Shown here piece by piece: positions 521 through 22,519 of a DNA stretch of 64,000 nt; the stretch's first letter is position 1, and the number at the start of each line of letters is the position of its first letter. Position numbers and translations under genes: made by a program. The notes beneath the pieces are model-generated. The model ran no database searches. It saw nothing but the letters and a program-made list of their open reading frames with translations, and was not told the DNA's origin. The stretch is taken from positions 13,454,001-13,518,000 of the forward strand of contig NC_087246.1 in NCBI RefSeq assembly GCF_037042905.1, in the 5' to 3' direction. The DNA comes from Lytechinus pictus (lineage: Eukaryota).

Positions 521-991
521 AATGTTTTCCAGTCAGTTAGGATTGGTTTATTTTTCAACCTATCCTTTGTTAGTATACAACTGGTAAAAGATGATAATCA
601 ATTCTTTGTACTTTAAACAGAATTTCATTTATGTTTTCTTAATTTCGTTTGTATATGCACATATTTGGTTATTTTCCTTTGTTAATATTTTGTTTTAAAC
701 GCTGATTTCTTCCTTGCATTATCAGTAAATTTATTCGAGACAAAACATTTAATTAAGTATGAAATAATCTTTTCTTTGCAAAATTATTTAAAGTTTGTAT
801 AAAAAAAAGGGGGAAAAAGAAAATCAGGCCGAATTTAATAAGTTGTTATATCATGTTTAATCAGAATAACGTTGATCTTAAAACACTGAAGAAGAAAACA
901 GGGTATGTTTTTTGTTGTTGTTTAAAATGTTTTGATCATTTTTTTATGTTTATCAGTGTACATTTCATTTTGAGAATTTGGTTAATACATA

Positions 992-1330
992 ACCTCTATC
1001 AAGACCAAGAGCACCACAATCATCCATGAGCCACCATCTAGCTACCACTCCATACTCATCGTGTACTCCTGTGGTTGTACCAGTACCAACATTCAACCAC
1101 GCGCTTCATTCATCATCGTCACCACCCATGTTCGGGGTCTACCCTCATCATGATCAACCCATCCATGTTACGATGTCGTCAATGAAGGTCCGTTCTACAA
1201 GGAATCGACGATCACGCCGAGTGGTAATCAAGGATGAGGAAGAGGAGATCATCGACGTCGTATCGCTCTGAAGAATATGGACTTTGTTTTGATGTGGTAC
1301 ACTTGGATAATGTATTTGAGATTTGAAGTC
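992..1330 (+). pseudogene. 5'-truncated fragment (copy 1) of the zinc-finger-less Sp5-like gene
   Basis: Homology to exon 2 of the other copies starts abruptly at ACCTCTATCAAGACC (~992), runs through the stop at 1271 and ends at ~1330 before the polyA signal. No exon 1, promoter or Sp box. Confidence 0.85.
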
Positions 1331-1493
1331 ATATATGTTTCAAAGGTATTTTTACAAAAGAAAACACATTTTTCAGGGTGAACTTCCCCGATTTATGTCT
1401 CTCTCTCTCTCTTTATAACGAATTGTATTTTTATTTCCTCTCATCTCCTTTCCCTTCCTTTTCTTTCAACTGGTTGGCCAATCGAAGATATAA

Positions 1494-1944
1494 GTTGGAA
1501 GTTCACCCTGACAATTTTTTTATTGTACAAATGGCAGGAAAATGATCAAGAATATTAAAGGTTTGACGAAAATTCATCAAAATAACGAAAAAACCCACCA
1601 AAGTTAATAGAATGGCACTTAAACACAAATTGTGACGTCATATATCTTTTGGTAGGAAAATGAATGAAATATCATTTTCTAAAAAAATAAATGAAAATGC
1701 TTTGTTGGCACTTTATACATAATAGCTGACATTTTTGTTCACCCCCATTCAAACAAATATTTTAGTCATCATGAACCATTAAATGTAAATTATGGATTTC
1801 ATATTACAATATGGAGTAGCTGCTCGTATATGAAGTCAAATTAACAAATTTAAACTCTAAAAACTTACGTAATCTTTTATGGATTTTTCCTCAAACCTTC
1901 CCCAATATTTCTATTTTTTTATTCAGGGTGAACTTCCGCTTTAA
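1494..1944. mobile_element. Degenerate non-autonomous DNA element (Kolobok-like MITE)
   Basis: Inverted termini GGAAGTTCACCCTGA...TCAGGGTGAACTTCC followed by GCTTTAA; related copies at ~6950-7370, 14710-15158, 18382-18832 and 23575-23878. Superfamily is inferred. Confidence 0.55.
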
Positions 1945-3036
1945 GATTTGTGTCTTATTTTAGAAGGATATGAATTCTTATTTCCTTTTCCATCATTTGC
2001 ATCTCTTTCCTTCTTCCTTTACTTCATCATTTCTTTTTTTTCTTCCCTTTCTCTCCCTTTCCCCTCCCTTTTCTTTCACCTCTCCCTTTACATCTCCCTT
2101 TTGTGGGGGGGGGGGGGGTGGAACCAGGCCCCTTCAGCCCCCAAGGATCCCCAAAACACTTACGATGAGGCGGCATATGATAAAAAGGTTGCGTGTTATT
2201 TGATATAAATACAATTTTGAATATTTTGATATTTTTGAACACAATTTTCATGCATAGAATGGGCTGACAATTTTGGGATATAATTTTTGTATGTAGCCTT
2301 AAGATGTTTAAGGTGGTCAAAAGGGGAGGGGATATCAAAGGAAAAATATAAGCATTATAAAGAGAGAGCTTTCTGAAAGTATCAGTCATCAAAGAAGAAA
2401 AAAGGCCAATACATCTTCGTGAAATCGTAACATTATATTGTACTGAACTATTAATGACCTTGTACAAAAGTTTAACATAGGCTTTAAATCTCTAATTACA
2501 GATTTTCCTTCGTTATTATTTTTTTCAGCTGCAGAATTACCCCCACCTCTGATTCATTGTTCAGGGGCTTCCAAGAAACAACACATTTAGTCAATTCATT
2601 TCAAATTGTTTAAAGGGACATTATCACGGACGTAACAGAAGTTATACTAAAATAAAAAGTTTCTAAATAGATGAATATTTGCCACTCGAATATAGAAATT
2701 TCTTGTTTCAACAGGAATCTATTTGTGATAGAAATTCTATAGGACCCACTGAAAAAAATCTAGTATAATGATTTAGAGCAATCCACTTCATATACGTTTT
2801 TTACAGGCATTTTTTAAAAGTATCGTAATAAGTCTTTACTAAAGATGCTGTTACTATGTGTTCGTTCATATTCTTTGATGTATTAATAAAATAAATAAGT
2901 ATTCTGTGACTACTTAATCGAAATATGGCAATTTTGTGTCGAAAGTAACCATATCACTCTGTAACCTTTATGGACTAAAGAAAATCCCATCGAGATGGAT
3001 TGAGTACCCTAAAATAGACTTTGACTATAATTTCCC

Positions 3037-3559
3037 ATCCTACCTGTTAACAGTGTAGATCTATTCATTGATAAGTGTCACCCAGCTGGAGTATTCTTCT
3101 TTCTATTGCATTCTTACCTCCATGTCACTATTCAAAGCCGAGAGATGACCCGTCCGTTGTGACTGGTGAACGACCTGTCATTGATAAGCATCGGACAATG
3201 CCCGAAGATCCTCCTATTGGTCAGACTTTGTGATGGTTGAACTTGACAGATAGAAGCCCGGGATTAGCGGCATAGGATCAAGATCAGATGGATCTCTGAT
3301 CTTACCGGCTCATTGAGTCGTCCAGTGGTAGATGAAAGGATTCATGAACGAGTTTGGTCAGTTAGGATAAATAGCTATCAAATTCTCGACATAGCATCAT
3401 TTATGCTTTGAGCTTTCGCCAGTGCACAACTACTACAACTAACCCTGGACACTATCATTATTGGTCATCATTACTTCAGTTTATAAGAGTATATCATTAC
3501 AACTATACATCTTGGCATCTGTCTTGGACTTGATTTAAGTGGAATATTATATTGGCAGC
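3037..3559 (+). promoter_or_regulatory. Conserved proximal promoter/5'UTR of the Sp5-like genes
   Basis: About 520 bp shared by all three intact copies (also ~16258-16784 and ~20807-21349), while copy 4 diverges further upstream. Contains TGATAA x2, CAGCTG, ATTGG, GGATTA, an AAGATCAGA-N6-TCTGATCTT inverted repeat and TATA-like GATAAATA. Confidence 0.6.
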
Positions 3560-4454
3560 ATGGCTTCTCTGACTTCAAAGTACTTACAGGTATGTACACA
3601 TAGACATTAATTGTCGTTTCTCTCTTACAATATCAAATCTTACTTCTTTGGTTTCTCAAACAAGCTCAACTAAATGAAACTGTACAATTGTATAATAAAT
3701 ATTTAAAGCGTAGTGTGTTTGATAATGAGTCATGACATGAAGTGTATGGATATTTCGGTCTCATTGAATTAATTTTGATTTCTCCCTCTTTTCTTTAATT
3801 TCTCAGCTCCCTGAAGCTAGCTCGTGTGATATTGGCAAACCAAGTCCCCTGGCCATGTTAGCTGCAACCTGTCGAAAGATTGGCACATCACCAGGCGTGT
3901 CTTCCCGTCGAGTGCCGAGGATACTTTCACTACAACCACAGCTCACTCCCTTGTCGACGACCTCGTCTGCTTCTACATCGTCGTCCTGTTCGTATCTTCC
4001 ACCTACTCCACCACCGTCACCACACATGACCTCGTCATCTCCAGCGTTGTCGGTATCACCTCAGCCTACCGAGTTGTCATCTCTCCGATCAGTTAGCCCG
4101 ATCATCCCTGGTCATCAGCCATGCTACTATCCTCTATATCAACCTGTTATGCGGTATTCTCCTTACTCTACTACACCTCTATCAAGACCAAGAGTACCAC
4201 CCTCATCCATGAGCTACCATCTAGCTACCACTCCATACTCATCGTGTACTCCTGTGGTTGTACCAGTACCAACATTCAACCACACGCTTCATTCATCATC
4301 GTCGCCACCCAAGTTCGGGGTCTACCCTCATCATGATCAACCCATCCATGCTAAGATGTCGTCAATGAAGGTTCTTTCTACGCGGAATCGACGATCACGC
4401 CGAGTGGTAATCAAGGATGAGGAAGAGGAGATCATCGACGTCGTATCGCTCTGA
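3560..4454 (+). CDS. Sp5-like Sp-box protein lacking zinc fingers, copy 2 (225 aa); exons 3560-3589 and 3807-4454
   Basis: Exon 1 MASLTSKYLQ ends CAG|gtatgt; 217-bp intron with polypyrimidine tract ends ctcag; phase-0 exon 2 LPEASSCDIGKPSPLAMLAATCRKIG...IKDEEEEIIDVVSL*; AATAAA at 4536. Resembles vertebrate Sp5 N-terminus SLQAFLQ|DRTPSASPDLGKHSPLALLAATCSRIG (from memory). Confidence 0.85.
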
Positions 4455-6085
4455 AGAATATGGACTTTGTTTTGATATGGTACACTTGGATAATATATTT
4501 GAGATTTGAAGTCGCTTGTAGCGAACTCATGTTGAAATAAATCTTTTCGAAAATGCATTTCTTGTCTTAAAAGGACTTTAACTTTGGAGTCAAGCTGTTT
4601 GACTTCGAAAGAGTTAAGATAGGCGATGGGTTGCATTTGCTTGTATGTTTAGTGAGACAGTATCATATTGAGAGAGAGAGAGTGCATGAGGGGACGAGAA
4701 GAGGAAGACGAAGCACTGTGAAATATTTACTTAGTGTGAAAAAAAGTTTAATAAGTGAGGCATTGAGTGAGGGGGTAGTTCAGCAAGATATTTTGTTTGA
4801 TCCTTGATAAAGAGCGGAAGATATTTTGAAAAAAAAATCATTCACATAAATAGAAGAATGCTAGTCACTTCCTTCAGTGTTTAGAATTCAGATGGAACAT
4901 ATTTTTAAAATCATTTCTTTATTGTAAAAATAGCAGAAAAAAATATTTTCTTTTATTCAGTGTTCACTTCCCCTTTAAGATTTGTGTCTTTTCCAACATT
5001 TGCATCTCTTTCGAGTTTGAGTTTGAAAGTAAATAAGCTTGGTGAGTTCTATATAGACTCATCCAGGGAAATGAATAAATGAGGACCAGTGTAAATGATG
5101 GTTTTCTATTTAAATAATATTCTCAACAAAGGAAGGTAAAATGATGGTAATTGTCTTGTGGAATAACCATGAAAATTATCTTTTTATTTGTAAATAATAA
5201 ACTTAAAAGGGTTGGCAATTCACCGCGATTTAATTAGTATATAAAACAGCCAAGACAAAGATGATATAAGTCATTTATTTTCAAAATAATATTAAAGTAA
5301 AAAAGTTAAGCTGTGGAAACTAATCTATCTTCGTGACTTATAATTCTTATCATACGCTTTTGAATTAGCAATAGTCTGTCCAAATAAATTCTAGATCAGT
5401 TATCCCAATAATGATGAAATTAAAAAGGACATTTTTAGTTGTCAGGTTAGAATATAAAAAAAATTCAGCTCGCGCTTCTCATTCGCATAAAAACTGTCAG
5501 GACAGGATGCGTATATAACTAAACAATTGATCCGAATGCGAAGCACGAGCTAAAAATGTTTGATATTCTAACCTGACAACTGGAAACTTTTAGCATGTTT
5601 TAAAATAAACAAATAGCTGTGTATCTCGCGAATCAAGTAATACGAGCACAAAGCACGAGCTGGAATATTCTTTTTATTCCTATCAGAAAATTTGAACTTT
5701 TAAGCACGTTTTTAGATAAAGAACAATTTGTTTATCTCAATGAATGATTAATGCGAGCCCAAAGCGCAAGGTGAAATTTAATTGTACTGACCAGAAGTGG
5801 GAACCTTTTGAGCACTTTTTACCATGGAGGAAAATTGTTAAGAGAATACGTATCTCACTAATGATGAGAATTCAAAGCAAGGGCTAACTATTTTAAGTTA
5901 TCATGAACAGAATACATAAATACGATAAAATGCAAATACAATGCTTATGTGCAAGTTAAAAAAAATCCATATACTCAGGGGCAGATCCCGCTTTCGCCAA
6001 TGGGGGAGGGGGTGGGAGTTGGCAGAAAAATATTTTCATTTACATTTTACCCGATTGGACACCAAAACCTGTTTTTTGCCCTTCT

Positions 6086-6190
6086 AGTTCGAACATCAAA
6101 TCGGCGCCCCCAAATTCGAACATCAATTCGGCGCCCCCTAGTTCGAACATCATATCGGCGCCCCGTGGTCAACATCAAATGGGCGCTTCC
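6086..6190. repeat. 27-bp minisatellite inside a dispersed repeat
   Basis: (G/A)TTCGAACATCAA(A/T)TCGGCGCCCCC-like unit occurs about four times. Confidence 0.7.
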
Positions 6191-6839
6191 ACCCATTTAT
6201 TATTTATTCCCCCCTCTATTTCTTTCCCCCTTTTTTTCTCTCATCCTCTTTCCCCTTCTTTTTCATTCCTTTCTCCCCTTCCCTCTTTTTCCCTTCTTTC
6301 TTTCTTTCTTTCTTTCTTCCTTTCCCCCTCTTTCTCTTTCTTTTTATTTTCTTCCTTCCCCCTTTTCCTCTCTCCTTTTGTTCTCTTCATTTCCCCCTCT
6401 TCCTCCCTCTTTTTTTTTACCGGGGGGGGGGGAGGGGACCCAAACATCACATAATGTAATATCTAGTCAACCAAAAGTTGAGATCTTTGAAGATTTTTTA
6501 ATTACGGTTTATCATTTAATCCATTAAAGCCCCCCCCCCTAAAAAAAAAAATTCTTCGAGTTTGCCCTTTAAAATAATAATCCCGTATATCCTGATGCAT
6601 CTGAACAATATACTCTCTTACCAATGTCTCTCGGTCTATTGTCCAGTCATCAAGCTGGTCCAACCTTAGTATGGAATGGAGTCCCATCTAATCAGGTCAT
6701 TGGTCGATTTCCCCCACTCGACATATTTTCGCAATAAATCTAAAACACGAAAAGATCGCGCCACGACGTTTCATGACTTTTTCCTTCAAACTTCGAGATC
6801 TGAGGGCGTTTGGCAAAAAATAGGCCCCACCCTCGGGCT

Positions 6840-8200
6840 ATGCGATTTTACAATAGCATGGGCTTTATAGGGTTAAGACAAGTTGCACGTAATTCCTTCT
6901 TGATTTTTTTAATCCATATTTTCCCCGATTGGAAAATCGGAGACATAAGTTTGAAGTTCACCCTGACAATATTTTTAATTGTAAAATACATTTGTTAAGG
7001 TTTGAGGAAAACTCTTCAATATTAAAAAGTTATTAGAATGACACATAAACAAAAATTGACACGTCACATGCGAGCAGCTTCCCGATATATCTTGCACCAA
7101 GAAAATAAATGAAATTTTATTTTCTATAAAAAATAGATGAATATGTTTTTTATTGCCGTTAACATAAAAAGCTGACATTTTTCCAACCCTCTCCTAAGGA
7201 CCTAAAAAATCACCATTAACCATTGAATTAAAATTTATGCATTTCATATTATATAAGATATAGGGTAGCTCCTCGTATATGACGTCACATTGAAAAATTC
7301 TTAATCTTTGATGGATTTTTCGTCAAACCTTCGTCAATAATTTTACTTTTTTTATTAAGGGTGAACTTAAAGATTTGTGTCTTTTTTTCAGAAGGATGTG
7401 ACTTATTATATCCTTTTCCATCATTTGCATCTCTTTCCCCTTTCCTTTACTTCTCCTCCACTTTTTTTTCTCATTTTCTCTCTTTCCCCTTTCCCTGTAC
7501 ATGCTCCTTTTTAGAGGGGAGGGAGATTTTAAAATTACGGTAAATCCCCTCTCGTCAATTCAATGCAGGCATAAAAAATACAGCCCCATAATCTACATAT
7601 TTTTCCCCTCTGTACAAACTTCGACATTTTATCTATTGAAGCCCCCTCCCCCGAAAATCTGTGAGGTTGCCCCTTAAAATAATCGCCCCGTATATCCTGA
7701 TGTATCTGGAAAAATGCTCGCTCTTCCCAATATCATTCGGTCTATTGTCCGGTCATCAAGCTGGTCAAACCTTCCTATAGAATGGATTCCCTATCAGGTC
7801 ATTGGTCAGTGTCCTGTCACTGTAGGCAAAGCTGGACAATGGTCAAGGGTCTTTTGACTGGTCAATCATTTGATTGGTAAACTAGGTTTAACGCTAACGG
7901 GAAATCGGAAAAGATCAGACAACACTTTGATTCACAGACGTCTTGAAAGTCATTAAGTATTCTTTTAGTATACGTTTAGTATCCTTTTCAAACCTTAAAA
8001 ACCTTAATAAAGAGCAATTTAGCTATAGTTATTAGACTTGTAAGTAGAACTGACAGTTAATACATGTTGTGATGAGGCATATAGAAAAGTAATCTTTATT
8101 CCCCGCACCTCTTCCATTTATTTATAATATGCGATTGTTTTCGTCATTCTAAAAGATTGACCGTTTATTTTTTGTGGATTTGTAAAGAGAGTTCAACATT
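6840..8200 (+). repeat. Duplicated intergenic spacer block, paralogous to ~18280-19690 and ~23460-24800, and partly to 8940-9375 + 13111-13400
   Basis: Colinear shared sequence, e.g. ATAGGGTTAAGACAAGTTGCACGTAAT and GGATTCCCTATCAGGTCATTGGTCAGTG. Confidence 0.85.
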
Positions 8201-9382: not shown

Positions 9383-11557
9383 GTGTTGTTATCGTATTAT
9401 ACTGATGATTCGATGTTGCAACCGCAAAGTGTAAGCGCGCCACCTTGTGTTGGTCTCTTGGCCACATTATTTTACGATGGTTGTGAACTTTGGTTTGATG
9501 GTGTGGTAGTCCAAGATGATTACTTGAGAGGTTCTTGTAGCATTGTTGCTGGGGCTCCATTCATGGAGCAGAACGATATTTCGGTTCGCCCCTCCAAGCA
9601 GTTGATCATGTTTGGAGACGGTGCTACTTTCTGCTATGGTGTGTCATCTAGAGCAGCTCCGCCGTGTTTGTATGATGTTGATCTCGCTGGCATACATACG
9701 GTTACGAATCTCATTCTAAATGATCAGGAACGCGAGAAAAATGAGAGTCCAATTGATGATAGTCATGGAATTCATAATCATGTTACATTAAGGACCACAG
9801 TCATACCAGTAAACACTAACATACACAAAGAAGATGATGGATATGAGACGAGTGATAGTGAGATAGATGAATCTGAAAGTAATGATTGTAAATCTCGGAA
9901 TGAAGACCGAAGAGATGAGACTAGTGATGGTGAGGTGCATGAAACTAACAAAGGTGAAATGACACCATGCAATGTAGATGATGGTTATGAGAGTAGTGAT
10001 GGTGGAGGTAATGACTCTAACATAGTTCATGTGAAACAATGTAATGCAGTTGATGGATACATGAATTGTGATGGTGAGGTGAAAATATTAACAAACAGTG
10101 CTGACATGAAAGGATGGAATGAAGAGGTTGACTATGCAACTAGTGATAGTCTGGTTCATGAAAGTGACCAATGTGATGTGAAACAATGGAATGAAGAAAT
10201 TGGATATGAAGCTAATGTTGATGTGGTTGATAAAGCTAATGGAGATGATGTGCTTATTGGTCACATGAGAGATGTAAAAGAAACAAGGAAAGATAATGTA
10301 GGGTCTATTGTTAGTGATGTAATTGGTCAGGATACCGATGCCAATGTGCCTTCATTGTTCCAAGAGTGTACAGTTACAGACACTTATGAAAGCAGTTCAT
10401 GCTCTCCTCCAGTTTTACGTTTGAGTGATTTCAGAACTTCTTCACTCCATTGCATTGATTGTTGGCATGGTAATATTGCCTTTACTACTCTGAGTGGATT
10501 GAGTTGCTCTCCACTTTCTGCCGATGAGTTTGAGCCTTTGGTAATTTGGGATTGTTGCCAATCCAATGTGACCTGCAGTTTTACAGAGTCCCTTGATTTG
10601 GATCCTAGTCAGAACCATGGTCCTTGCTTTTTGTCAGATGTGACAATTTCACCTAACATGACTTTGCCTGATGTAACAGTTTTGCCTAACTTGTCTTTGC
10701 CTGATGTGACAGTTTCGCCTACCTTGACGTTGCCGGATGTGACAATTTTCCCTAACATGACTTTGCCTGATGAGACAGTTTTGCCTAACATATCACTCGA
10801 TATGCTACTGGATCGCTGCATAGGTAGCAACCTTGTCGTTGACCGTGGAGGTACCGTACTGCCTCTTGATCACATGTTTGACACTTCTAGTAGTGTTGAT
10901 ACTGTGTCCGTTACACCATCGGCCGATTCGGTGTTACCCTTCAACGCGAGTAACCGCCACAGAGCAAACACCGGGGTAACCGCTATGCCTCCGTGCCAGG
11001 CTAACGTCAGCAGCAGTAGCTCTACTACGCAAGTTATCCGTCCGGCGCGGGTACAATGTTTCGTGAACGGGTTGATCCCGCAGAGCTGTAAGTCGTTCAT
11101 CCCGCCAGCATCGTATCCTACCGAATGTAAGCACTCACCTAGCATCCCAGTCTCTAATAGCCATGTTCATTCAATCCGGACTGGTGTCGCTCCTCGTACT
11201 CGCCCTCCAAATCAGCCCCTTGCTACCCTAGAGCTTGGTCCTGCTGATCTGTCTGTCCTTGAAGGTGTTCATCATTGTCGTCCTCCAGATCAGCCCCATG
11301 CTATACCAGGGCATTGTCCTGCTGATCTGTCCAACCCTGAAGGATGTCTTCACACTCGTCCGCCAGACCGGCCCCATGCTACTCCAGGGTATGGTCCTGC
11401 TGGTCTGTCTATCCCAGTGGTAAAGTTTCATAGACCGTATGATGTTGGTCCCTACCTAGGACTTTTCTTCATGATTCTCGCCTATCAACGCTCCAGAGAC
11501 ATTTATTGTTTGATACAGTGTTCGCTCGCCTTGCTTTCAAGACCTATGATTACGTAG
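9383..11557 (+). CDS. 724-codon ORF of the LTR element: Gypsy protease-like C-terminal fragment followed by acidic and tandem-repeat regions
   Basis: FDGVVVQDD...IVAGAPFMEQNDISVRPSKQLIMFGDG resembles the end of Gypsy aspartic protease domains; then DDGYExSD repeats, 11-aa LPDVTVxPNxT repeats and 26-aa RPPDQPHA repeats; no RT, RNase H or integrase motifs. Confidence 0.55.
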   Translation: MLLSYYTDDSMLQPQSVSAPPCVGLLATLFYDGCELWFDGVVVQDDYLRGSCSIVAGAPFMEQNDISVRPSKQLIMFGDGATFCYGVSSRAAPPCLYDVDLAGIHTVTNLILNDQEREKNESPIDDSHGIHNHVTLRTTVIPVNTNIHKEDDGYETSDSEIDESESNDCKSRNEDRRDETSDGEVHETNKGEMTPCNVDDGYESSDGGGNDSNIVHVKQCNAVDGYMNCDGEVKILTNSADMKGWNEEVDYATSDSLVHESDQCDVKQWNEEIGYEANVDVVDKANGDDVLIGHMRDVKETRKDNVGSIVSDVIGQDTDANVPSLFQECTVTDTYESSSCSPPVLRLSDFRTSSLHCIDCWHGNIAFTTLSGLSCSPLSADEFEPLVIWDCCQSNVTCSFTESLDLDPSQNHGPCFLSDVTISPNMTLPDVTVLPNLSLPDVTVSPTLTLPDVTIFPNMTLPDETVLPNISLDMLLDRCIGSNLVVDRGGTVLPLDHMFDTSSSVDTVSVTPSADSVLPFNASNRHRANTGVTAMPPCQANVSSSSSTTQVIRPARVQCFVNGLIPQSCKSFIPPASYPTECKHSPSIPVSNSHVHSIRTGVAPRTRPPNQPLATLELGPADLSVLEGVHHCRPPDQPHAIPGHCPADLSNPEGCLHTRPPDRPHATPGYGPAGLSIPVVKFHRPYDVGPYLGLFFMILAYQRSRDIYCLIQCSLALLSRPMIT

Positions 11558-12932: not shown

Positions 12933-13110
12933 CGCCAGTGTGTTGTTATCGTATTATACTGATGATTCGATGTTGCAACCGCAAAGTGTAAGCGCGCCAC
13001 CTTGTGTTGGTCTATTGGCCATGGTTATTAAAGACAGTTACACGTAACCTCAAAGTTGTCTAGTATATTTACTTCTTGTATATTAAGTTGTGCCTTATTA
13101 ACCCATGGCG
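12933..13110 (+). repeat. 3' LTR (178 bp)
   Basis: Starts CGCCA and ends TGGCG; contains ATTAAA; preceded by AAAAAGATGGGAAAAGTAAAAGGCAGTCA. Confidence 0.75.
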
Positions 13111-16100
13111 CAGACAACTCTTTGATTCATTGACGTCTTGAAAGTCATAGTATTCTTTTAGTATCCCGTAAGTATCCTTTTCAAATCTTAAAAACCTTAA
13201 TAAAGAGCAATTTAGCTATCGTCATTCGATTTGGAAGTAGAACTGACAGTTCGTACATATTGTGATGAGGTATATAGACAAATAATCTTTATTTCCCGTA
13301 CCTCTTCCATTTTGTAATAATATGCGATTTCTTTCGTCATTCTAAAAGATTGACAGTTAAGTTTTTCTTGTATTTGTAAAGAAAAATCAAAATTTTTTGG
13401 AAAAAGTTTGATTGCTAATGAGAATACTTTATTGTAATGTTAAAAGTATATATGTAGATTTGAGAGAATACTGCATGAGAGTAATTACGGAATATCGAAG
13501 TGAAAAATTGTGGCTTTCTTTAAAATTTCACAAGTTTATTTGTTAAATTTAATGTCTCCCCTTGCATTACCTGCTCATAATGAATTTCTCATTTACTGTG
13601 GGGGGGGGGGGGGGGAGCTTTCTTGGGATTCATTTGATTGTTTATATATTATGGTTTTGAAAACTCAATCCTTAATCTTTAAAAAGACCCAGAGCTATCA
13701 TGTAACAACAACAACTTTAATAATACAACAAGTTGATAGGAATTAATATAAATTGTTTCTGATCGTTGGATGATACTCGACTATTAATTACCCTGTAACA
13801 AAATTTTACGAAGGCTTTAAATTATCTTTCTATATTATTTTTCACTGAGCAGCAGACATACCCCCACCTCTGATTCATCGTTCAAGGGCTTTCAAGAAAC
13901 ACTATAAAAGCAATCGGTAGGCCTACCAAAATTGATTGAAGAGATACATTACCACGGTAAGTAATAAAACTTATATTTAAATAAATAGTTTCTTATAAAA
14001 CAGAGGTTTGCCATTTGAATGTAGGAATCCCTTATTGGGACAATAATTCATTATCATTTTTAATAGATATTCAATAAGACCCACTTTGAAAGATATAAGA
14101 ATAATATTTTAGAGGAAAGATACCCCATGATGTGTTGTTTTTATAGGCAATTTAAAAGCATCGTAATTAAACATACTTTAAGATGTTGCCACTTGGCGTT
14201 TGATATTTTAAAAAAGGTTATTAGATTAATTTATTTTAAATTTGTGACACCATATGCGAGCAACTTCCCCATATATATTGTAGTAAAAAAATAATTAAAT
14301 GTCATTTTCTAACGAAAGAAAATGCTTTTTATTGTACCTTAAGAACATAAGCTGACATTTTCTTCCCCAGCTTCTGAAATATTATTTTGGGGCATCATGC
14401 TCGTGTACCATTAAAATTGAAATATATGCGTTTCATATTCCATAACATATGGGTAGCTGCCCATATATGAGATCACAGTGAAAATTCGAATTCTAATAAT
14501 TTTTTTAATCTTTAATAGATTTACTTAAACTTTAAGCAATATTCTTTGCATGTTTCAAAGGTATTTTTACAAAAGAAAACACATTTTTCAGGGTGAACTT
14601 CCCCGATTTATGTCTCTCTCTCTCTCTTTATAACGAATTGTATTTTTATTTCCTCTCATCTCCTTTCCCTTCCTTTTCTTTCAACTGGTTGGCCGATCGA
14701 AGATATAAGTTGGAAGTTCACCCTGACAATTTTTTTATTGTACAAATGGCAGGAAAATGATCAAGAATATTAAAGGTTTGACGAAAATTCATCAAAATAA
14801 CGAAAAAACCCACCAAAGTTAATAGAATGGCACTTAAACACAAATTGTGACGTCATATATCTTTTGGTAGGAAAATGAATGAAATATCATTTTCTAAAAA
14901 AATAAATGAAAATGCTTTGTTGGCACTTTATACATAATAGCTGACATTTTTTTTCACCCCCATTCAAACAAATATTTTAGTCATCATGAACCATTAAATG
15001 TAAATTATGGATTTTATATTACAATATGGAGTAGCTGCTCGTATATGAAGTCAAATTAACAAATTTAAACTCTAAAAACTTACGTAATCTTTTATGGATT
15101 TTTCCTCAAACCTTCCCCAATATTTCTATTTTTTTATTCAGGGTGAACTTCCGCTTTAAGATTTGTGTCTTATTTTAGAAGGATATGACTTCTTATTTCC
15201 TTTTCCATCATTTGCATCTCTTTCCTTCTTCCTTTACTTCATCATTTCTTTTTTTTTCTTCCCTTTCTCTCCCTTTCCCCTCCCTTTTCTTTCACCTCTC
15301 CCTTTACATCTCCCTTTTATGGGGGGGGGGGGGTGGAACCAGGCCCCTTCAGCCCCCAAGGATCCCCAAAACACTTACGATGAGGCGGCATATGATAAAA
15401 AGGTTGCGTGTTATTTGATATAAATACAATTTTGAATATTTTGATATTTTTAAACACAATTTTCATGCATGGAATGGGCTGACAATTTTGGGATATAATT
15501 TTTGTATGTAGCCTTAAGATGTTTAAGGTGGTCAAAAGGGGAGGGGATATCAAAGGAAAAATATAAGCATTATAAAGAGAGAGCTTTCTGAAAGTATCAG
15601 TCATCAAAGAAGAAAAAAGGCCAATACATCTTCGTGAAATCGTAACATTATATTGTACTGAACTATTAATGACCTTGTACAAAAGTTTAACATAGGCTTT
15701 AAATCTCTAATTACAGATTTTCCTTCGTTATTATTTTTTTCAGCTGCAGAATTACCCCCATCTCTGTTTTATTGTTCAGGGGCTTCCAAGAAGCAACACA
15801 TTTAATCAATTCAATTCAAATTGTTTGAAGGGACATTATCACGGACGTTACAGAAGTTATACTAAAATAAAAAGTTTCTAAATAGATGAATATTTGCCAC
15901 TTGAATATAGACATTTCTTGTTTCAACAGGAATCTATTTGTGATAGAAATTCCATAGGACCCACTGAAAAAAATCTAGTATAATGATTTAGAGGAATCCA
16001 CTTCATATACGTTTTTTACAGGCATTTTTTAAAGTATCCTAATAAGTCTTTACTAAAGATGCTGTTACTATGTGTTCGTTCATATTCTTTGATGTATTAA

Positions 16101-16784
16101 CCAAATGAATAAGTATTATGTGACTACTTAATCGAAATATGGCAATTTTTGTGTCGAAAGTAACCATATCACTCTGTAACCTTTATGGCAAAGACTAAAG
16201 AAAATCCCATCGAGATGGATTGAGTACCCTAAAATAGACTTTGACTATAATTTCCCGTCCTACCTGTTAACAGTGTAGATCTATTCATTGATAAGTGTCA
16301 CCCAGCTGGACGAGTATTGTCATTCTTTCTATTGTGTTCTTGTCTCCATGTCACTATTCAAAGCCGAGAGATGACCCGTCCGTTGTGACTGGTGAACGAC
16401 CTGCCATTGATAAGCAGCGGACAATGGCCAAAGATCCTCCTATTGGTCAGACTTTGTGATGGTTGAACTTGACAGATAGAAGCCCGGGATTAGCGGCATA
16501 GGATCAAGATCAGACGGATCTCTGATCTTACCGGCTCATTAAGTCATCCAGTGGTAGATGAAAGGATTCATGAACGAGTTTGGTCAGTTAGGATAAATAG
16601 CTATCAAATTCTCGACATAACATCATTTATGCTTTGAGCTTTCGCCAGTGCACAACTACTACAACTAGCCCTGAACACTATCATTATTGGTCAGCATTAC
16701 TTCATGTTATAAGAGTATATCATTACAACTATACACCTTTGCATCTGTCTTGGACTTGATTAAGTGGAATATTATATTGGCAGC

Positions 16785-17649
16785 ATGGCTTCTCTGACTT
16801 CAAAGTACTTACAGGTATGTACACATAGACATTAATTGTCGTTTCTCTCTTACAATATCAAATCTTACTTCTTTGGTTTCTCAAACAAGCTCAACTAAAT
16901 GAAACTGTACAATTGTATAATAAGTCATAATATGTAGTTTATGGATATTACGGTTTCATTAAACTAATTTTGATTTCTCCCTCTTTTCTCTATTTTTTCA
17001 GCTCCCTGATGCTAGCTCGTGTGATATTGGCAAACCAAGTCCACTGGCCATGTTAGCTGCTACCTGTCGAAAGATTGGCACATCACCAGGCGTGTCTTCT
17101 CGTCGAGTGCCGAGGATACCTTCACCACAACCCCAGCTCACTCCCTTGTCGACGACCTCGCCTGTTTCTACATCGTCGTCCTGTTCGTATCTTCCACCTA
17201 CTCCACCACCGTCACCACACATGACATCGTCATCTCCAGCGTTGTCGGTATCACCTGAGCCTACCGAGTTTTCACCTCTCCGATCAGTTAGCCCGATCAT
17301 CCCTGGTCATCAGCCATGCTACTATTCTCTATATCAACCTGTTATGCGGTACTCTCCTTACTCTACTACACCTCTATCAAGACCAAGAGTACCACCATCA
17401 TCCATGAGCTACCATCTAGCTACCACTCCATACTCATCGTGTACTCCTGTGGTTGTACGAGTACCAACATTCAACCACACGCTTTATTCATCATCGTCAC
17501 CACCCATGTTCGGGGTCTACCCTCATCACGATCAACCCATCCATGCTACGACGTCGTCAATGAAGGTCCGTTCTACAAGGAATCGACGATCACGCCGAGT
17601 GGTAATCAAGGATGAGGAAGAGGAGATCATCGACGTCGTATCACTTTGA
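16785..17649 (+). CDS. Sp5-like Sp-box protein lacking zinc fingers, copy 3 (225 aa); exons 16785-16814 and 17002-17649
   Basis: MASLTSKYLQ|LPDASSCDIGKPSPLAMLAATCRKIG; 187-bp GT-AG intron; intact frame; AATAAA at 17745. Confidence 0.85.
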
Positions 17650-20600
17650 AGTGAAGAGTGTGGACTTAATTATGATTTTGTAAACATGAATTATATATTT
17701 GATATTTGAAGTCGCTTGTGGCGTTCCTGTTGCATCAATTGTGAAATAAATCTGTTTGAAAGTGCACATCATTTGTCTTAAAATGACTTTGATTTTGTTT
17801 TCAATCTATTTAGAAGAAGGGCGCAATTGCGGTTGTATAAATAATTATGATGGGTGGTTTGCTTTTTCTTGTTTGTGTTTATAGTTGTTGGAGTGAAATG
17901 TGATATTGGGCGAGTGGAGAGGGGGGGGGGGGGTAGAGATAGTATGTTTGAGTGTGTGAGGAGAGGGCCAATGAGAAGAGATTCATAGGGTTTCGTTATT
18001 TTGTATGACAGTAGCATGATGCTAAAAAAAGAGGTAGAGAGAGAGAGAGAGAGAGAGAGCGCGTATGATATGAGAGGATAAGGAGAAGAAAAATCATTTA
18101 GAGATGAGACATAAAGCAAGATACGTGAGGTGAGGGTGTAAAATAGGAAGGGATTTTGTGTGATTCACGTTACAGAATCAAAGTATATTAGAAAATATAT
18201 TTTCATTCAAATGAAACTAAGAATGGTAATCACGTATTCCAGTGTTAACCATATCTAGCCCGATTGACGGTCTATGCGAATTTACAATAGCCTGTGCTGT
18301 ATAGGGTTAAGACAAGTTGCACGTAATTTCTTCTTGATTTTTTTATCCACATTTTCCCCGGTTGGAAAATCGAAGACATAAGTTGGAAGTTCACCCTGAC
18401 AATATTTTTAATTGTAAAATTAGCAGGAAATTGATAAAGAATATTGTTAAGGCTTGAGGAAAACTCTTCAATATTAAAAAGTTATTAGAATGACACATAA
18501 ACAAAAATTGTGTCGTCACATGCAAACAGCTTCCCGATATATCTTGCAGCAAGAAAATAAATGAAATTTTATTTTCTATAAAAGAAAAAAGATGAATATG
18601 TTTTTTATTGCACGTTAACATAAAAGCTGACATTTTCTCCACCCCTCTCCCAAAGACTTAAAAAATCAACATGAACCATTGAATTAAAATGTATGCATTT
18701 TATATTATATAAGATATAGGGTAGCTCCTCATATATGACGTCACATTGAAAAATTCTTAATCTTTGATGGATTTTTCGTCAAACCTTCGTCAATAATTTT
18801 ACTTTTTTTTTTTTTACTAAGGGTGAACTTAAAGATTTGTGTCTTTTTTAGAAGGATGTTACTTATTATTTCTTTTTCCATCATTTGCATCTCTTTCCCC
18901 CTTCCTTTACTTCCCATCCAATATCTTTTTTTCTTCTCATTTTTTCTCTTTCCCCTCTCCCAGTACATACTCTTTTTTTTAGAGGGGGGGGGGGGGGTTT
19001 ATAATTACGGTAAAGCCTCGTCAATTCAATGCAGGCATCAAAATACAGCCCCCAAATCTACATATTTTTTCCCTCTGTACAAACGTCGACATTTTATCTA
19101 TTGAAGCCCCCTCCCCCGATAAATCTGTGAGGTTGCCCTTTAAATAATCGCCTCGTATATCCTGATGTATCTGAATAATGATCACTCTTCCCAATATCAT
19201 TAGGTCTATTGTCCGGTCATCAAGATGGTCCATCCTTCCTATAGAATGGATTATCTATCAGGTCATTGGTCAGTGTCCTGTCACTGTAGACCAGTCTGGA
19301 CAATGGTCAAGGGTCTTTTGATTGGTCAATCATTTGATTGATAAACTTGGTTTTAAGCTAACGGGAAGTCGGAAAAGATCAGAAAACTCTTTGATTCATT
19401 GACGTCTTGAAATTCATTTAGTATTCTTTTCATATACCTTTAGTACCCTTTTCAAGCCTTTAATATCTTAATTAAGGGCAAATTAGCTATCGTTACTCGA
19501 TTTGGAAGTAGAATTGACAGTTAGTACATATTGTGATGAGGCATATAGAAAAGTAGTTTTTATTCCCCGCTTCCATCTATTCATAATATGCGATTGTTTT
19601 CGCCATTCTAAAAGATTGACAGTTTTAGTTTTTCATGGATATGTAAAGAGAATTCAACATTCTTTGAAAAAGTTTGATTGCTTCAGATCTATTTGATTGG
19701 TTGCATATTATGTTTTTGAAAATCGAATCCATAAATCATTGAAATAATAAAGAGCTATCAAGTTACTAGCAACAACTATCGAAGACAAAAAGTTCATACA
19801 GTAATAATTCGTTTCTGATCATTTGATGATATTTGACTATTAATAACTCTGTAACGAAGTTTTGCATAGTCTTTAAATGTGTAATTACAGATTATCCTTC
19901 GATATCATTTTTCAGCTGTAGACTTACCCCACCTATGATTTAGTGTTTAGGGGCTTCCAAGAAACAATAAAAAAAAATTGGGTAGGCCTACCAAATTTGT
20001 TTGAAGAGATATATTATCACGTTAGGTTTATCAAAATAAATCGTTTCTTACAAAATAGTTTTGGGGGCAATTTGAATATTAGGCATAATCCCTTATTTTT
20101 ACAATAATCTGGTAATTTTTTATAGAAATAGAGCTTTTTTCTCTCCCTCTCTATCTCTCTCTGCTATGATTTCCCTCTATCTTCTTCACTCACTTTCCTT
20201 CTCTACTTTGTCCACTTTTGTTTCTATCCAACTAATTCTTTCTCTTCTTGCTTGCAAGGTCTCTTCCACCTATCTCTTAGTTAACTCTCAGCCGTTTCTC
20301 ACTCCTTGTCTTTAATTGGTAAATTATTTGACATCTCCCTTCTATGTTGTATTGAATATATGTTTGAATTGTTTATGTATATTTTCTGTCAATATATTCG
20401 CCCAATGTATATGTCGTTTGTGTTTGTATATATACTTTATATCATTTGTATGTACAGCCAGTGGAGGCCAAATTTATATGTATTTTATCATGGATCAACA
20501 ATAAATGAATCTGAATCTGAAAGATTTAAAAATAATGTTTTAGAGGACAGATACCCCATGATACGGTGTTTTTGATAGGCAATCCAAAATCATCGTGATT

Positions 20601-21349
20601 AAATATGTTTTAAGATGTCACTGAGTGTTTGATCTAATTAGTCTCTGATAAACGAATAAAAAAAAGGTATTTTGTTAATAATTAATCGAAGTGTACGAAT
20701 TTATATATACTAAGAAAATCTCACTAAGTTGAATTCAATGCGTAGTACCTGGGTTGAGAACCCTAAAAGCGTAAAACCATAGAGCTATTTCGATTCTTAT
20801 TTCCTGTCCTACCCGTTAACAGTGTAGATCTGTTCATTAATAAGTGTCACCCAGCTGGACGAGTATTGTCATTCTTTCTATTGTGTTCTTGTCTCCATGT
20901 CACTATTCAAACCCGAGAGATGACCCGTCCGTTGTGATTGGTAAACGACCTGTCATTGATAAGCATCGGACAATGGCCAAAGATCCTCCTATTGGTCAGA
21001 CTTTGTGATGGTTGAACTTGACAGATAGAAGCCCGGGATTAGCGGCATAAGATCAAGATCAGACGGATCTCTGATCTTACCGGTTCATTAAGTCATCATG
21101 ACTATTGATATCCAGTGGTAGATGAAAGGATTCATGAACGAGTTTGGTCAGTGAGGATAAGTAGCTATCAAATTCTCGACATAACATCATTTATGCTTTG
21201 AGCTTTCACCAGTGCACAACTACTACAACTAACCCTGGACACTATCATTATTGGTCATCAGTACTTCAGGTTATAAGAGTATATCATTACAACTATACGC
21301 CTTGGCATCTGTCTTGGACTTGATTTAAGTGGAATATTATATTGGCAGC

Positions 21350-22244
21350 ATGGCTTTCCTGACTTCAAAGTACTTACAGGTATGTACACATTGACATTAA
21401 TTGTCGTTTCTCTCTTACAATATCAAATCTTACTTCTTTGGTTTCTCAATCAAGCTCAACTAAATGAAACTGTACAGTTGTATAATAAATATTAAAAGCG
21501 TAGTGTGTTTGATAATGAGTCATGACATGAAGTGTATGGATATTTCGGTCTCATTGAACTAATTTTGATTTCTCCCTCTTTTCTTTCATTTCTCAGCTCA
21601 CTGAAGCTAGCTCGTGTGATATTGGCAAACCAAGTCCACTGGCCATGTTAGCTGCAACCTGTCGAAAGATTGGCACATCACCAGGCGTGTCTTCTCGTCG
21701 AGTGCCGAGGATACCTTCACCACAACCCCAGCTCACTCCCTTGTTGACGACCTCGCCTGTTTCTACACCATCATCCTGTTCGTATCTTCCACCTACTCCA
21801 CCACCGTCACCACACATGACCTCGTCATCTCCAGCGTTGTCGGTATCACCTCAGCCTACCGAGTTGTCACCTCTCCGATCAGTTAGCCCGATCATCCCTG
21901 GTCATCAGCCATGCTACTATCCTCTATATAAACCTGTTATGCGGTACTCTCCTTACTCTTCTACACCTCTATCAAGACCAAGAGTAAAACCATCATCCAT
22001 GAGCTACCATCTAGCTACCACTCCATACTCATCGTGTACTCCTGTGGTTGTACCAGTACAAACATTCAACCACACGCTTCATTCATCATCGTCACCACCC
22101 ATGTTCGGGGTCTACCCTCATCACGATCAACCCATCCATGCTACGATGTCGTCAATGAAGGTTCGTTCTACAAGGAATCGACGATCACGCCGAGTGGTAA
22201 TCAATGATGAGGAAGAGGAGATCATCGACGTCGTATCGCTTTGA
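21350..22244 (+). CDS. Sp5-like Sp-box protein lacking zinc fingers, copy 4 (225 aa); exons 21350-21379 and 21597-22244
   Basis: MAFLTSKYLQ|LTEASSCDIGKPSPLAMLAATCRKIG; 217-bp GT-AG intron; ends INDEEEEIIDVVSL*; AATAAA at 22340. Confidence 0.85.
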
Positions 22245-22519
22245 AGTGAAGAGTGTGGACTTTATTATGATTTTGTATACATGAATTATATATTTGAGAT
22301 TTGAAGTCGCTTGTGGCGTTCCTGTTGCATCAATTGTGAAATAAATATGTTTGAAAGTGCACATAATTTGTCTTAAAATGACTTTGATTTTGTTTTCAAT
22401 CTATTTAGAAGAAGAGCGCAATTGTGGTTGTATAAATAATTAAGATGGGTGGTTTGCTATTACTTGTTTGTGTTTATAGTTGCTAGAGTGATATTGGGCG
22501 AGTGGAGGGGGTGGACATA

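What the first reader, a model, noticed from the sequence alone, without database searches (positions are those of the whole stretch)
992..22345. Tandem cluster of zinc-finger-less Sp5-derived genes: candidate decoy or cofactor-adaptor family
Seen: three intact two-exon copies (225 aa) plus a fragment, each intact copy with its own conserved upstream region, GT-AG intron, stop and AATAAA. The 10-codon first exon is missed by the ORF track. Known: GKPSPLAMLAATCRKIG is an Sp box, and YLQ|intron|...DIGKxSPLA matches my recollection of the Sp5 N-terminus and its phase-0 intron. Sp factors normally have a Btd box and three C2H2 fingers in that same large exon; none occur in these genes or anywhere in the window. 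Inference: a lineage-specific amplified Sp5 derivative that keeps the cofactor-binding Sp box but cannot bind DNA, acting as a dominant-negative or tethered co-regulator. Compact tandem copies recall rapidly transcribed early-zygotic clusters such as sea-urchin pmar1/micro1 (analogy only).
Basis: partly seen in the sequence, partly recalled or inferred. Interest (0 to 1): 0.92.

Follow-up and report, generated by a model that had tools for sequence, protein, structure and literature searches.

The report
Zinc-finger-less Sp5 paralogue gene cluster
Sea urchins carry a tandem array of expressed genes that are copies of the Wnt-pathway transcription factor Sp5 with the DNA-binding part cut out, so they probably act by competing for Sp5's protein partners rather than by binding DNA.

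Summary
The window (Lytechinus pictus, C2:13454001-13518000) holds three intact two-exon 225-aa genes and one 3' fragment. The whole array has five intact copies and two fragments. RNA reads show the 3589/3807 GT-AG splice, + strand transcripts that end just after AATAAA, and no onward splicing.

The Sp5 origin is strongly supported, beyond the Sp box. The proteins are collinear with echinoderm Sp5 in exon 1, the same phase-0 intron, the Sp box, LPPTPP, GxYPHH, the basic stretch before the Btd box, and an acidic EI[IV]DV[VT]S C-terminus. Only CxCPxC and the three fingers are missing.

The family was found only in echinoids (Lytechinus, Strongylocentrotus, Diadema, one unnamed ENA assembly). 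It has two subfamilies and is under purifying selection (dN/dS about 0.3). It is predicted disordered.

The C-terminus resembles the WDR5-binding motif of MYC and RbBP5. A complex model docks it in WDR5's WBM cleft (0.76; best control 0.01).

Function is inferred, not shown. The most likely role is a DNA-binding-incompetent competitor or adaptor for Sp5 cofactors.

RefSeq already models the genes, some as "Sp5-like". I found no paper describing them. First readers of this scan noted the same family in the adjoining window.

The parts
990..1271 (+). 3' fragment of a family member (last ~93 codons and stop), cut off upstream by a TAA and unrelated sequence. It is a pseudogene remnant.
3090..3420 (+). 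Copy A upstream block conserved with S. purpuratus. It holds TTCAAAG (3131), an ATTGG/CCAAT box (3213-3224), GGATTA (3261-3266), the palindrome AAGATCAGA-n6-TCTGATCTT (3280-3303) and the TATA-like GGATAAATAG (3365).
3560..3589 (+). Copy A exon 1, 10 codons (MASLTSKYLQ), followed by GT.
3590..3806 (+). Copy A intron, 217 nt, GT..AG, phase 0. It sits at the same position as the Sp5 intron.
3807..4454 (+). Copy A exon 2, 215 codons and stop. In order it holds the Sp box, LPPTPPPSP, FGVYPHH, a basic stretch and the EEEEIIDVVSL C-terminus.
4536..4541 (+). Copy A AATAAA. RNA coverage ends within about 110 nt downstream.
16785..16814 (+). Copy B exon 1.
17002..17649 (+). Copy B exon 2 (intron 16815-17001, 187 nt). 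AATAAA is at 17745.
21350..21379 (+). Copy C exon 1 (MAFLTSKYLQ).
21597..22244 (+). Copy C exon 2 (intron 21380-21596, 217 nt). AATAAA is at 22340-22345.

Best explanation
These genes are a tandemly amplified family of Sp5 paralogues, found so far only in echinoids. An internal loss removed exactly the CxCPxC core of the Btd box and the three C2H2 fingers. Every other conserved short motif of echinoderm Sp5 was kept, and so was its two-exon structure. That much is shown. The products are Ser/Pro/Thr-rich, basic, intrinsically disordered proteins. They carry a likely nuclear-localisation stretch (RNRRSRR, the remnant of the Btd-box flank). They also carry a TPPxSP site of the Cdc4/Fbw7 phosphodegron type and an acidic C-terminal EIIDVVSL. 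These roles are inferred. Because they cannot bind GC boxes, they most likely work purely through protein-protein contacts. They would occupy the same partners as Sp5 and so titrate or redirect Sp5-dependent (Wnt-dependent) transcription. The partners would be whatever binds the N-terminal motif and Sp box, plus WDR5 through its WBM cleft for the C-terminus. A multicopy array would give high dosage and the degron rapid turnover. My confidence in the identity (Sp5-derived, finger-less, expressed, selected) is about 0.9. My confidence that the C-terminus is a WDR5 WBM ligand is about 0.4. My confidence in competition or decoy as the net mode of action is about 0.4.
For: Structure and expression are covered. 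Collinearity with Sp5 shows in alignment A3. BLASTP gives E 1e-8 for the N-terminus and 0.013 for the C-terminus. hhalign gives E 7.8e-20 over 94 columns. The C-terminal half hits Sp5 twice, on either side of the Btd/finger block, at E 2.4e-3 and 1.9e-4. The phase-0 intron follows [RK][FY]LQ in Sp5 (RFLQ|HSE), in the array genes (KYLQ|LPE) and in the chromosome-3 paralogue (KYLQ|LPA). In the own genome, the best hit outside the family for the Sp-box segment is Sp5. In a profile search of 1.84 billion proteins, the only hits outside the finger-less family are Sp5 (full-length Asterias Sp5 at E 1.4e-5, plus two Sp5 fragments) and one repeat protein I take as spurious. Neither search returned NocA/ZNF503-type proteins. 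No C2H2 finger or CxCPxC occurs in the window. On selection, L. pictus versus S. purpuratus gives dN/dS 0.27-0.34 at dS about 0.47. Invariant residues cluster in the motifs across Lytechinus, Strongylocentrotus and Diadema. On disorder, the AF2 model has pLDDT 52.8 and pTM 0.14, with one helix at residues 24-31, which is the Sp box. For the C-terminus, the published WBM core is acidic-acidic-[VIL]-D-V, as in RbBP5 ...EDEEVDVTSVD and MYC SEEEIDVVSV (PMC10583817; PMC10279693). Acidic xDV tails are widespread in invertebrate Sp5. The complex model of animal WDR5 with the last 40 aa scores 0.76 against a best control of 0.01. That mark was reached by 51 of 78 solved complexes and 2 of 108 mismatched pairs. 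The runs agree in at least 43% of contacts and the partner's pLDDT is at least 44. The interface is peptide residues EIIDVVSL against WDR5 residues equivalent to human N225, Y228, L240, K250, F266, V268, K272 and Q289. Tandem arrays also exist in S. purpuratus. Sp5 and the finger-less transcripts occur in runs of the same study, and run X4 holds both.
Against: No binding, localisation or phenotype data exist. The Sp box has no established partner. The C-terminal motif has Ile where known WBM ligands have an acidic residue (E-I-I-D-V, not E-E-I-D-V). It also fits a SUMO-interaction motif. The complex pass may reflect the model's memory of solved WDR5-MYC and WDR5-RbBP5 structures. The test was not calibrated on peptides or disordered chains. 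It used a metagenomic animal WDR5 (about 90% identical to the urchin exons I could read), not the L. pictus protein. Artificial Sp5 constructs lacking the DNA-binding domain served as inert controls in Hydra and zebrafish Sp5 work (PMC6338789), which does not suggest a strong dominant-negative effect in that setting. The developmental stage and tissue of expression are unknown. Within the array, some copy pairs have dN/dS near 1 (L003 versus L005, 0.97).
Confidence: 0.5

Rival explanations
1. The protein is a tethered co-regulator rather than a decoy. A DNA-bound partner such as TCF/beta-catenin, Sp5 itself or another Sp-box reader would bring it to chromatin. It would then deliver WDR5-containing or SUMO-dependent complexes through its C-terminus. 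In that case it has a positive function of its own, like NET-family co-repressors or the plant miP1a/b bridge to TOPLESS.
For: Two separate conserved interaction modules sit at opposite ends of a disordered chain. The WDR5 docking model passed. Hydra and mammalian Sp5 co-precipitate with beta-catenin and TCF (PMC6338789). There is a microProtein precedent for bridging to a co-repressor (PMC4807768).
Against: It is not known which part of Sp5 contacts TCF or beta-catenin. No partner is known for the Sp box. The sequence evidence is the same as for the decoy reading, so the two cannot be separated in silico.
Confidence: 0.3
2. The family is neofunctionalised and its role is unrelated to Sp5 or Wnt patterning. 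The retained motifs would serve only generic purposes such as nuclear import and phospho-dependent turnover.
For: The family has been separate from Sp5 since before the Diadema-camarodont split. The promoter block conserved with S. purpuratus was not compared with the Sp5 promoter. The best-holding samples for Sp5 and for the array genes differ, except for X4.
Against: All of Sp5's conserved non-DNA-binding motifs are retained in order, including ones with no obvious generic role (SKYLQLP, Sp box, GVYPHH).
Confidence: 0.15
3. The copies are transcribed pseudogenes or decaying duplicates with no function.
For: The window holds one fragment and the array two. Some within-array pairs have dN/dS near 1.
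Against: All five full-length copies keep open frames, splice sites and poly(A) signals. Cross-species dN/dS is about 0.3. The motifs are invariant from Lytechinus to Diadema. Spliced RNA is abundant, with exon depth far above intron depth.
Confidence: 0.03
4. The genes are relatives of the NET family (NocA/Elbow/Tlp, ZNF503/703) rather than of Sp5.
For: NET proteins also carry an Sp motif and act without classical DNA binding (general knowledge).
Against: The own-genome search with the Sp-box segment returned only the family, Sp5 and Sp1-4. The profile search returned Sp5 and no NET protein. Collinearity extends to the Sp5-specific exon 1, intron, LPPTPP, YPHH and C-terminus. No Btd box and no finger is present.
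Confidence: 0.02

Closest known systems
Canonical Sp5 (L. pictus gene at C1:36435290-36438793; echinoderm Sp5 in general)
   Same: Both have a two-exon structure with a phase-0 intron after [RK][FY]LQ. The Sp box PSPLAMLAATCRKIG is identical. Both have LPPTPP, G[VLI]YPHH, the S-x-x-K-[LV]-x-x-R-R basic flank and an acidic EI[IVL]DV[VT]S C-terminus.
   Different: The array genes lack CxCPxC and all three C2H2 fingers. They are 225 aa rather than 411 aa. They are multicopy in a tandem array on another chromosome (C2, against C1 for Sp5). The degron-like site reads TPPPSP instead of TPPAE.
NET family (NocA/Elbow/Tlp; ZNF503/ZNF703)
   Same: Both have an Sp motif near the N-terminus and are thought to act as co-regulators without sequence-specific DNA binding (general knowledge).
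   Different: NET proteins keep a Btd box and one atypical finger, and these proteins have neither. Sequence searches link this family to Sp5 and not to NET proteins.
MicroProteins and Id-type dominant negatives (Id, LITTLE ZIPPER, miP1a/b)
   Same: Each is a paralogue of a transcription factor that has lost its DNA-binding part and keeps only interaction modules (PMC4807768, PMC9638782).
   Different: Classical microProteins keep a folded dimerisation domain and trap the parent factor. Here only short linear motifs in a disordered chain are kept, so the likely targets are the parent's cofactors and not the parent itself.
WDR5 WBM-site ligands: MYC box IIIb, RbBP5, KANSL2, PER2
   Same: Both have an acidic run followed by [IV]-D-V-[VT]-S. 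The motif is predicted to dock in the cleft lined by N225 and Q289. PER2 offers a precedent for regulation by competition at this site (PMC13649712).
   Different: The position before the [VIL] is Ile and not acidic. The motif sits at the very C-terminus. No binding has been measured.
pmar1/micro1 tandem arrays of sea urchins
   Same: Both are compact tandem multicopy regulatory genes in echinoids whose array state is conserved between species.
   Different: There is no sequence relationship. pmar1 is a DNA-binding homeodomain repressor. Early-zygotic expression of the present family was not tested.

Membership tests
SP subfamily of KLF/SP transcription factors | SP box S/T-P-L-X-phi-L-X-X-X-C-X-R/K-phi near the N-terminus | tested here: met
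   SPLAMLAATCRKI at residues 23-35 fits every position of the consensus quoted in PMC4558859.
SP subfamily of KLF/SP transcription factors | Btd box C-X-C-P-X-C just before the fingers | tested here: not met
   No CxCPxC occurs in any frame of the window. Only the basic flank survives, with RNRRSRR aligned to RRCRRCR.
SP subfamily of KLF/SP transcription factors | Three C2H2 zinc fingers (KLF-type DNA-binding domain) | tested here: not met
   Pfam finds no zinc-finger family. The six-frame regex scan finds no C2H2 pattern in the window. Transcripts end after the AATAAA of the same gene.
Sp5 lineage (descent, not function) | Collinear Sp5-specific motifs and a shared intron position and phase | tested here: met
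   hhalign gives E 7.8e-20, 2.4e-3 and 1.9e-4 for three collinear blocks. The phase-0 intron follows [RK][FY]LQ in all three gene types.
NET family (NocA/Elbow/ZNF503/703) | Sp motif plus Btd box plus a single atypical C2H2 finger, with sequence affinity to NET proteins | tested here: not met
   There is no Btd box and no finger. No NET protein appears among the hits of the own-genome or 1.84-billion-protein searches, whereas Sp5 does.
WDR5 WBM-site ligands | Core acidic-acidic-[V/I/L]-D-V | tested here: inconclusive
   The sequence reads E-E-E-E-I-I-D-V-V-S-L. The IDVV core is identical to MYC, but Ile replaces the acidic residue directly before it.
WDR5 WBM-site ligands | Docking in the WBM cleft (N225, Q289 and neighbours) | tested here: met
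   This is in silico only. The score is 0.76 against a best control of 0.01 (mark reached by 51 of 78 solved complexes and 2 of 108 mismatches). The runs agree in at least 43% of contacts and the partner's pLDDT is at least 44. The contacts are to the equivalents of N225, Y228, L240, K250, F266, V268, K272 and Q289. The pass may come from the model's memory of solved complexes.
WDR5 WBM-site ligands | Measured binding to WDR5 that is lost on mutation of the IDVV core | not testable with these tools
   This needs a peptide binding assay.
MicroProtein / dominant-negative transcription-factor paralogues | Derived from a multi-domain factor, keeps interaction modules and lacks the DNA-binding domain | tested here: met
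MicroProtein / dominant-negative transcription-factor paralogues | Sequesters the parent factor or its partners into inactive complexes | not testable with these tools
   This needs interaction and perturbation experiments.
Cdc4/Fbw7 phosphodegron substrates | Hydrophobic-hydrophobic-T-P-P-x-S/E, phosphorylated and bound by Fbw7 | tested here: inconclusive
   LPPTPPPSP is nearly invariant in the family, and Sp5 has LPPTPPAE. The consensus is from my own knowledge. Phosphorylation and turnover were not tested.

The most novel reading that the evidence does not exclude
Invertebrate Sp5 recruits WDR5 through a previously unrecognised C-terminal WBM-type motif. Echinoids then evolved a dosage-amplified array of finger-less Sp5 copies, each an Sp box plus a degron plus a WBM motif. 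These act as short-lived competitive inhibitors for WDR5 and the Sp-box partner. That would add a new negative-feedback layer to Wnt/Sp5 anterior-posterior patterning.
Probability: 0.2. Interest if true: 0.85.

Novelty: new variant of a known kind. Interest (0 to 1): 0.66.

Why it matters
Sp5 is a conserved Wnt target. In sea urchins it restricts the anterior neuroectoderm gene network (PMC10765061). This family is an old, selected, multicopy set of natural Sp5 proteins without the DNA-binding domain. It would be an unrecognised node in one of the best-mapped developmental gene networks. It would also be a natural experiment showing which parts of Sp5 matter apart from DNA binding. The retained motifs give function-blind evidence that the Sp box, the LPPTPP site, GxYPHH and the acidic IDV tail are working modules of Sp5. 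The acidic xDV tail recurs in mollusc, annelid, priapulid and cnidarian Sp5. It points to WDR5 as a candidate cofactor that can be tested directly with peptides.

Tried and rejected
- **Pfam.** The scan of the three proteins gave nothing except a sub-threshold FXR_C1 hit on the basic-acidic tail.
- **ESM Atlas.** The feature search gave only chance-level hits (0.82 or less).
- **Tree for dating.** A maximum-likelihood tree of the N-terminal region (100 columns) was too poorly resolved to date the duplication. Hemichordate Sp5 fell inside the finger-less polytomy, and only the grouping of copies by species and a weak B-subfamily pair were usable. Single characters conflict: KPSPL and LQLP look ancestral, while GxYPHH is shared only with echinoid Sp5.
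- **L. pictus WDR5.** I could not give the L. pictus protein to the complex test. The gene (C15, around 29.21 Mb) is split into exons of about 30 aa. A WD40 Pfam scan of the genome found other WD40 genes instead. Two locus searches failed as 'query too short'. I used an intact animal WDR5 reading frame from a metagenome contig, which I confirmed against PDB WDR5/Wds.
- **KLF/SP paper.** No supplements are held for it.
- **Literature.** Searches for Sp5-like plus urchin names, and for Sp5 plus WDR5, found no description of this family or of an Sp5-WDR5 link.
- **TCF-type site.** One TTCAAAG per promoter is within chance (about 0.4 expected per 800 bp by my estimate), and copy C lacks it. I record it only because it lies in the block conserved with S. 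purpuratus.
- **S. purpuratus LOC115923589.** The divergent S. purpuratus member LOC115923589 has no separate orthologue in L. pictus.
Full report
**What is there**

The window is Lytechinus pictus DNA (C2:13454001-13518000). Source names for identical proteins give the species.

It holds three intact copies of a two-exon gene:
- Copy A: exon 1 at 3560-3589 and exon 2 at 3807-4454.
- Copy B: exon 1 at 16785-16814 and exon 2 at 17002-17649.
- Copy C: exon 1 at 21350-21379 and exon 2 at 21597-22244.

Each copy encodes 225 aa. Each has a GT..AG intron of 187-217 nt and an AATAAA 82-96 nt after the stop. A 3' remnant lies at about 990-1271.

A six-frame search of the whole assembly finds five intact copies and two fragments. 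All lie within 36 kb at C2:13440243-13476241.

The copies are 92-96% identical over the upstream region, the intron and the coding sequence alike. Their mutual similarity therefore reflects recent duplication or gene conversion, not constraint.

**Are they real genes?**

Stranded raw RNA-seq reads of this species show the predicted 3589/3807 junction. There are 16 such reads with 12 start positions in run X21 and one read in X22. The junction is also in assembled contigs of two other runs at depth about 210.

Exon depth is tens to hundreds of times intron depth. Coverage stops within about 110 nt after the AATAAA. No joint leaves exon 2 for a downstream exon.

Variant letters and loose ends in the reads match the other copies and the 5' fragment upstream of the window, so several copies are transcribed.

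RefSeq independently models 225-aa products on another assembly. It names some "transcription factor Sp5-like" and others "uncharacterized".

**Relatives**

Sequence search finds the family in L. pictus, L. variegatus and S. purpuratus. The S. purpuratus proteins are auto-named "extensin" or "RPB1-like". The family is also in Diadema setosum and in an unnamed ENA assembly with at least nine distinct members.

S. purpuratus has three copies within 8 kb.

A longer subfamily of about 280 aa is single-copy on L. pictus chromosome 3 (LOC129256558). It has a Diadema orthologue.

A profile of the family, run against 1.84 billion representative proteins, returned ten proteins:
- Six finger-less echinoid members.
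- Three Sp5 hits: full-length Asterias Sp5 (E 1.4e-5) and two Sp5 fragments, from an ENA urchin assembly and from Asterias.
- One repeat protein, which I take as spurious.

No asteroid, holothuroid, ophiuroid, hemichordate or NocA/ZNF503-type finger-less relative appeared.

**Relation to Sp5**

The canonical L. pictus Sp5 lies on another chromosome (C1:36435290-36438793), 205 kb from Sp1-4.

Aligned with echinoderm Sp5, the finger-less proteins match block by block, in the same order:
- Exon 1 ends in [RK][FY]LQ.
- The Sp box matches, with PSPLAMLAATCRKIG identical to L. pictus Sp5.
- LPPTPP follows.
- G[VLI]YPHH follows, shared only with echinoid Sp5.
- SS-x-x-K-[LV]-x-x-RR-x-RR follows, which in Sp5 runs straight into RRCRRCRCPNC.
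- The acidic C-terminus matches: EEEIIDVVSL against SEDEIVDVTSE.

Profile-profile comparison gives E 7.8e-20 for the first 94 columns. The C-terminal half hits Sp5 at two places that flank the Btd/finger block, at E 2.4e-3 and 1.9e-4.

The intron is phase 0 at the same codon boundary in Sp5 (RFLQ|HSE, 2265 nt), in the array genes (KYLQ|LPE) and in the chromosome-3 paralogue (KYLQ|LPA, 229 nt).

What is missing is exactly CxCPxC and the three fingers. Neither pattern occurs anywhere in the window.

It is therefore upheld by independent evidence. Its stated refutations (no splicing, onward splicing, a better NocA/Elbow match, assembly artefact) all fail.

**Selection and history**

Between L. 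pictus and S. purpuratus, dN/dS is 0.27-0.34 at dS about 0.47. Within the array it ranges from 0.19 to 0.97.

Across 18 family members the invariant residues sit in the motifs.

Copies group by species in the tree. The array state is conserved while the copies turn over or homogenise.

Both subfamilies are present in Diadema and in camarodonts. The loss of the fingers therefore predates that split, which is Triassic or earlier by my own knowledge.

The timing relative to other echinoderm classes is unresolved.

**Properties of the protein**

Ser, Pro and Thr make up 43% of the residues. There are 13 [ST]P sites and the pI is 9.6.

AlphaFold2 with the family alignment gives pLDDT 52.8 and pTM 0.14. 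The only helix covers the Sp box at residues 24-31. The protein is best read as a disordered chain of short linear motifs.

RNRRSRR is a plausible nuclear-localisation signal (inference).

LPPTPPPSP has the form of a Cdc4/Fbw7 phosphodegron, like MYC box I (my knowledge). Sp5 itself has LPPTPPAE.

**The C-terminus**

An earlier first-reader note (s1-317524) pointed to a likeness with MYC box IIIb.

The literature gives the WDR5-binding-motif core as acidic-acidic-[V/I/L]-D-V. It gives the RbBP5 peptide AAEDEEVDVTSVD and the MYC peptide SEEEIDVVSV. It names N225 and Q289 as key pocket residues (PMC10583817; "IDVV" in PMC10279693).

The family ends in EEEEIIDVVSL and echinoderm Sp5 in DEI[VL]DVTS. 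The IDVV or VDVT core and the following Ser match. An Ile replaces the acidic residue directly before the core.

Acidic tails with EDIDV, DSDIDVE or ENVDVTS also close Sp5 in molluscs, annelids, a priapulid and a jellyfish. They do not occur in vertebrates or hemichordates.

I modelled the last 40 residues of copy A with an animal WDR5. That WDR5 comes from a metagenome contig and scores 674 bits against Drosophila Wds and 666 bits against human WDR5 in the PDB. The result:
- The score is 0.76 and the best of three controls is 0.01.
- That mark was reached by 51 of 78 solved complexes and 2 of 108 mismatched pairs.
- The runs agree in at least 43% of contacts, and the partner's pLDDT is at least 44.
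- The confident interface is EIIDVVSL against the equivalents of human S223-N225, K227, Y228, L240, L249, K250, F266, V268, K272, L288 and Q289, which is the WBM cleft.

This shows that the motif looks like a WBM ligand to the model. Solved WDR5-MYC and WDR5-RbBP5 complexes exist, so the pass may be memory. The test is not calibrated on peptides. The motif also fits a SUMO-interaction motif.

**Promoter**

About 350 bp upstream (3090-3420 in copy A) aligns with two of the three S. purpuratus copies, despite dS of about 0.5. One 65-bp stretch is roughly 95% identical by eye.

The block holds TTCAAAG, a CCAAT box, GGATTA, a 9+9 palindrome and a TATA-like element. This conservation across species is real evidence of a cis-regulatory module. 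Which factors use it is not known.

**How it most likely works**

*Shown:* the genes are Sp5-derived, finger-less, spliced, expressed, multicopy and under selection.

*Inferred:* the protein is a nuclear, unstable, non-DNA-binding mimic of Sp5's interaction surface. It would compete with Sp5, and at WDR5's WBM cleft perhaps with RbBP5 or MYC, for cofactors. That would dampen or redirect Wnt/Sp5 outputs.

PER2 gives a precedent for regulation by WBM-site competition. MicroProteins give precedents for transcription-factor paralogues without a DNA-binding domain.

The main rival is a tethered adaptor with a positive role of its own. The two cannot be separated without experiments.

One point weighs against a strong dominant-negative effect. 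Engineered Sp5 constructs lacking the DNA-binding domain behaved as inert controls in heterologous assays (PMC6338789).

Sp5 and the array genes are both held by runs of one study, and one run holds both. The stages are coded, so the pmar1-like early-zygotic idea stays untested.

**Novelty**

The gene models exist in RefSeq. I found no paper that describes the family, the loss of the fingers, or an Sp5-WDR5 link.

It is a new variant of a known kind: a natural paralogue of a transcription factor that lacks the DNA-binding domain.

Noticed in passing
outside the window: Sp5 proteins P0042-P0142: Sp5 of molluscs, annelids, a priapulid, amphioxus and a jellyfish ends in acidic tails carrying one or more [ED][ED]x[IV]DV motifs (for example EDEDIDVD and ENVDVTSI). 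Vertebrate and hemichordate Sp5 lack them. This may be an ancient, undescribed Sp5 motif of the WDR5-binding type.
   Followed up: partly
window 9383-11557 (+): A 724-aa open reading frame lies between copies A and B. It has no Pfam match, is acidic, and carries DGYE-type and LPDVT(V/I) repeats. It could be a single-exon gene or transposon-derived.
   Followed up: partly
window 40573-46029 (-): An apparently intact non-LTR retrotransposon. ORF2 is 1285 aa with endonuclease, reverse-transcriptase and zf-RVT domains. ORF1 is 514 aa with a CCHC knuckle. It is flanked by N runs at 39917-40450 and 46218-46654.
   Followed up: partly
window 55785-56993 (+): A single-exon 402-aa rhodopsin-family GPCR reading frame (7tm_1, E 1.9e-27).
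   Followed up: partly
window 37745-38101 (+): An exon-sized reading frame encoding one SRCR domain (E 9e-19).
   Followed up: partly
window 1335-2396 and 14550-15611: Two stretches 98-100% identical, 13215 bp apart, each with a minus-strand reading frame beginning MYKVINSSVQ. They are either a very recent segmental duplication inside the array or a young repeat.
   Followed up: no
window 7672-8173, 13149-13366, 19136-19637, 24186-24677: A further repeat family lies 2.3-4.1 kb downstream of each gene copy's exon 1 (65-95% identical). The tandem unit is therefore larger than the gene.
   Followed up: no
L014 (G000:C3:8305543-8308629), exon 1 at 1239-1271 and exon 2 at 1501-2307: A single-copy finger-less Sp5 paralogue of a second subfamily (LOC129256558, 276-279 aa), with the same intron position and a DEEIIDVVSV end. 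It has a Diadema orthologue.
   Followed up: partly
G000:C2:13451464-13451565 (2.5 kb before the window): A 5' fragment of exon 2 (34 codons) appears to be transcribed. Three RNA reads leave copy A's sequence at 3903 and run into unrelated sequence.
   Followed up: no
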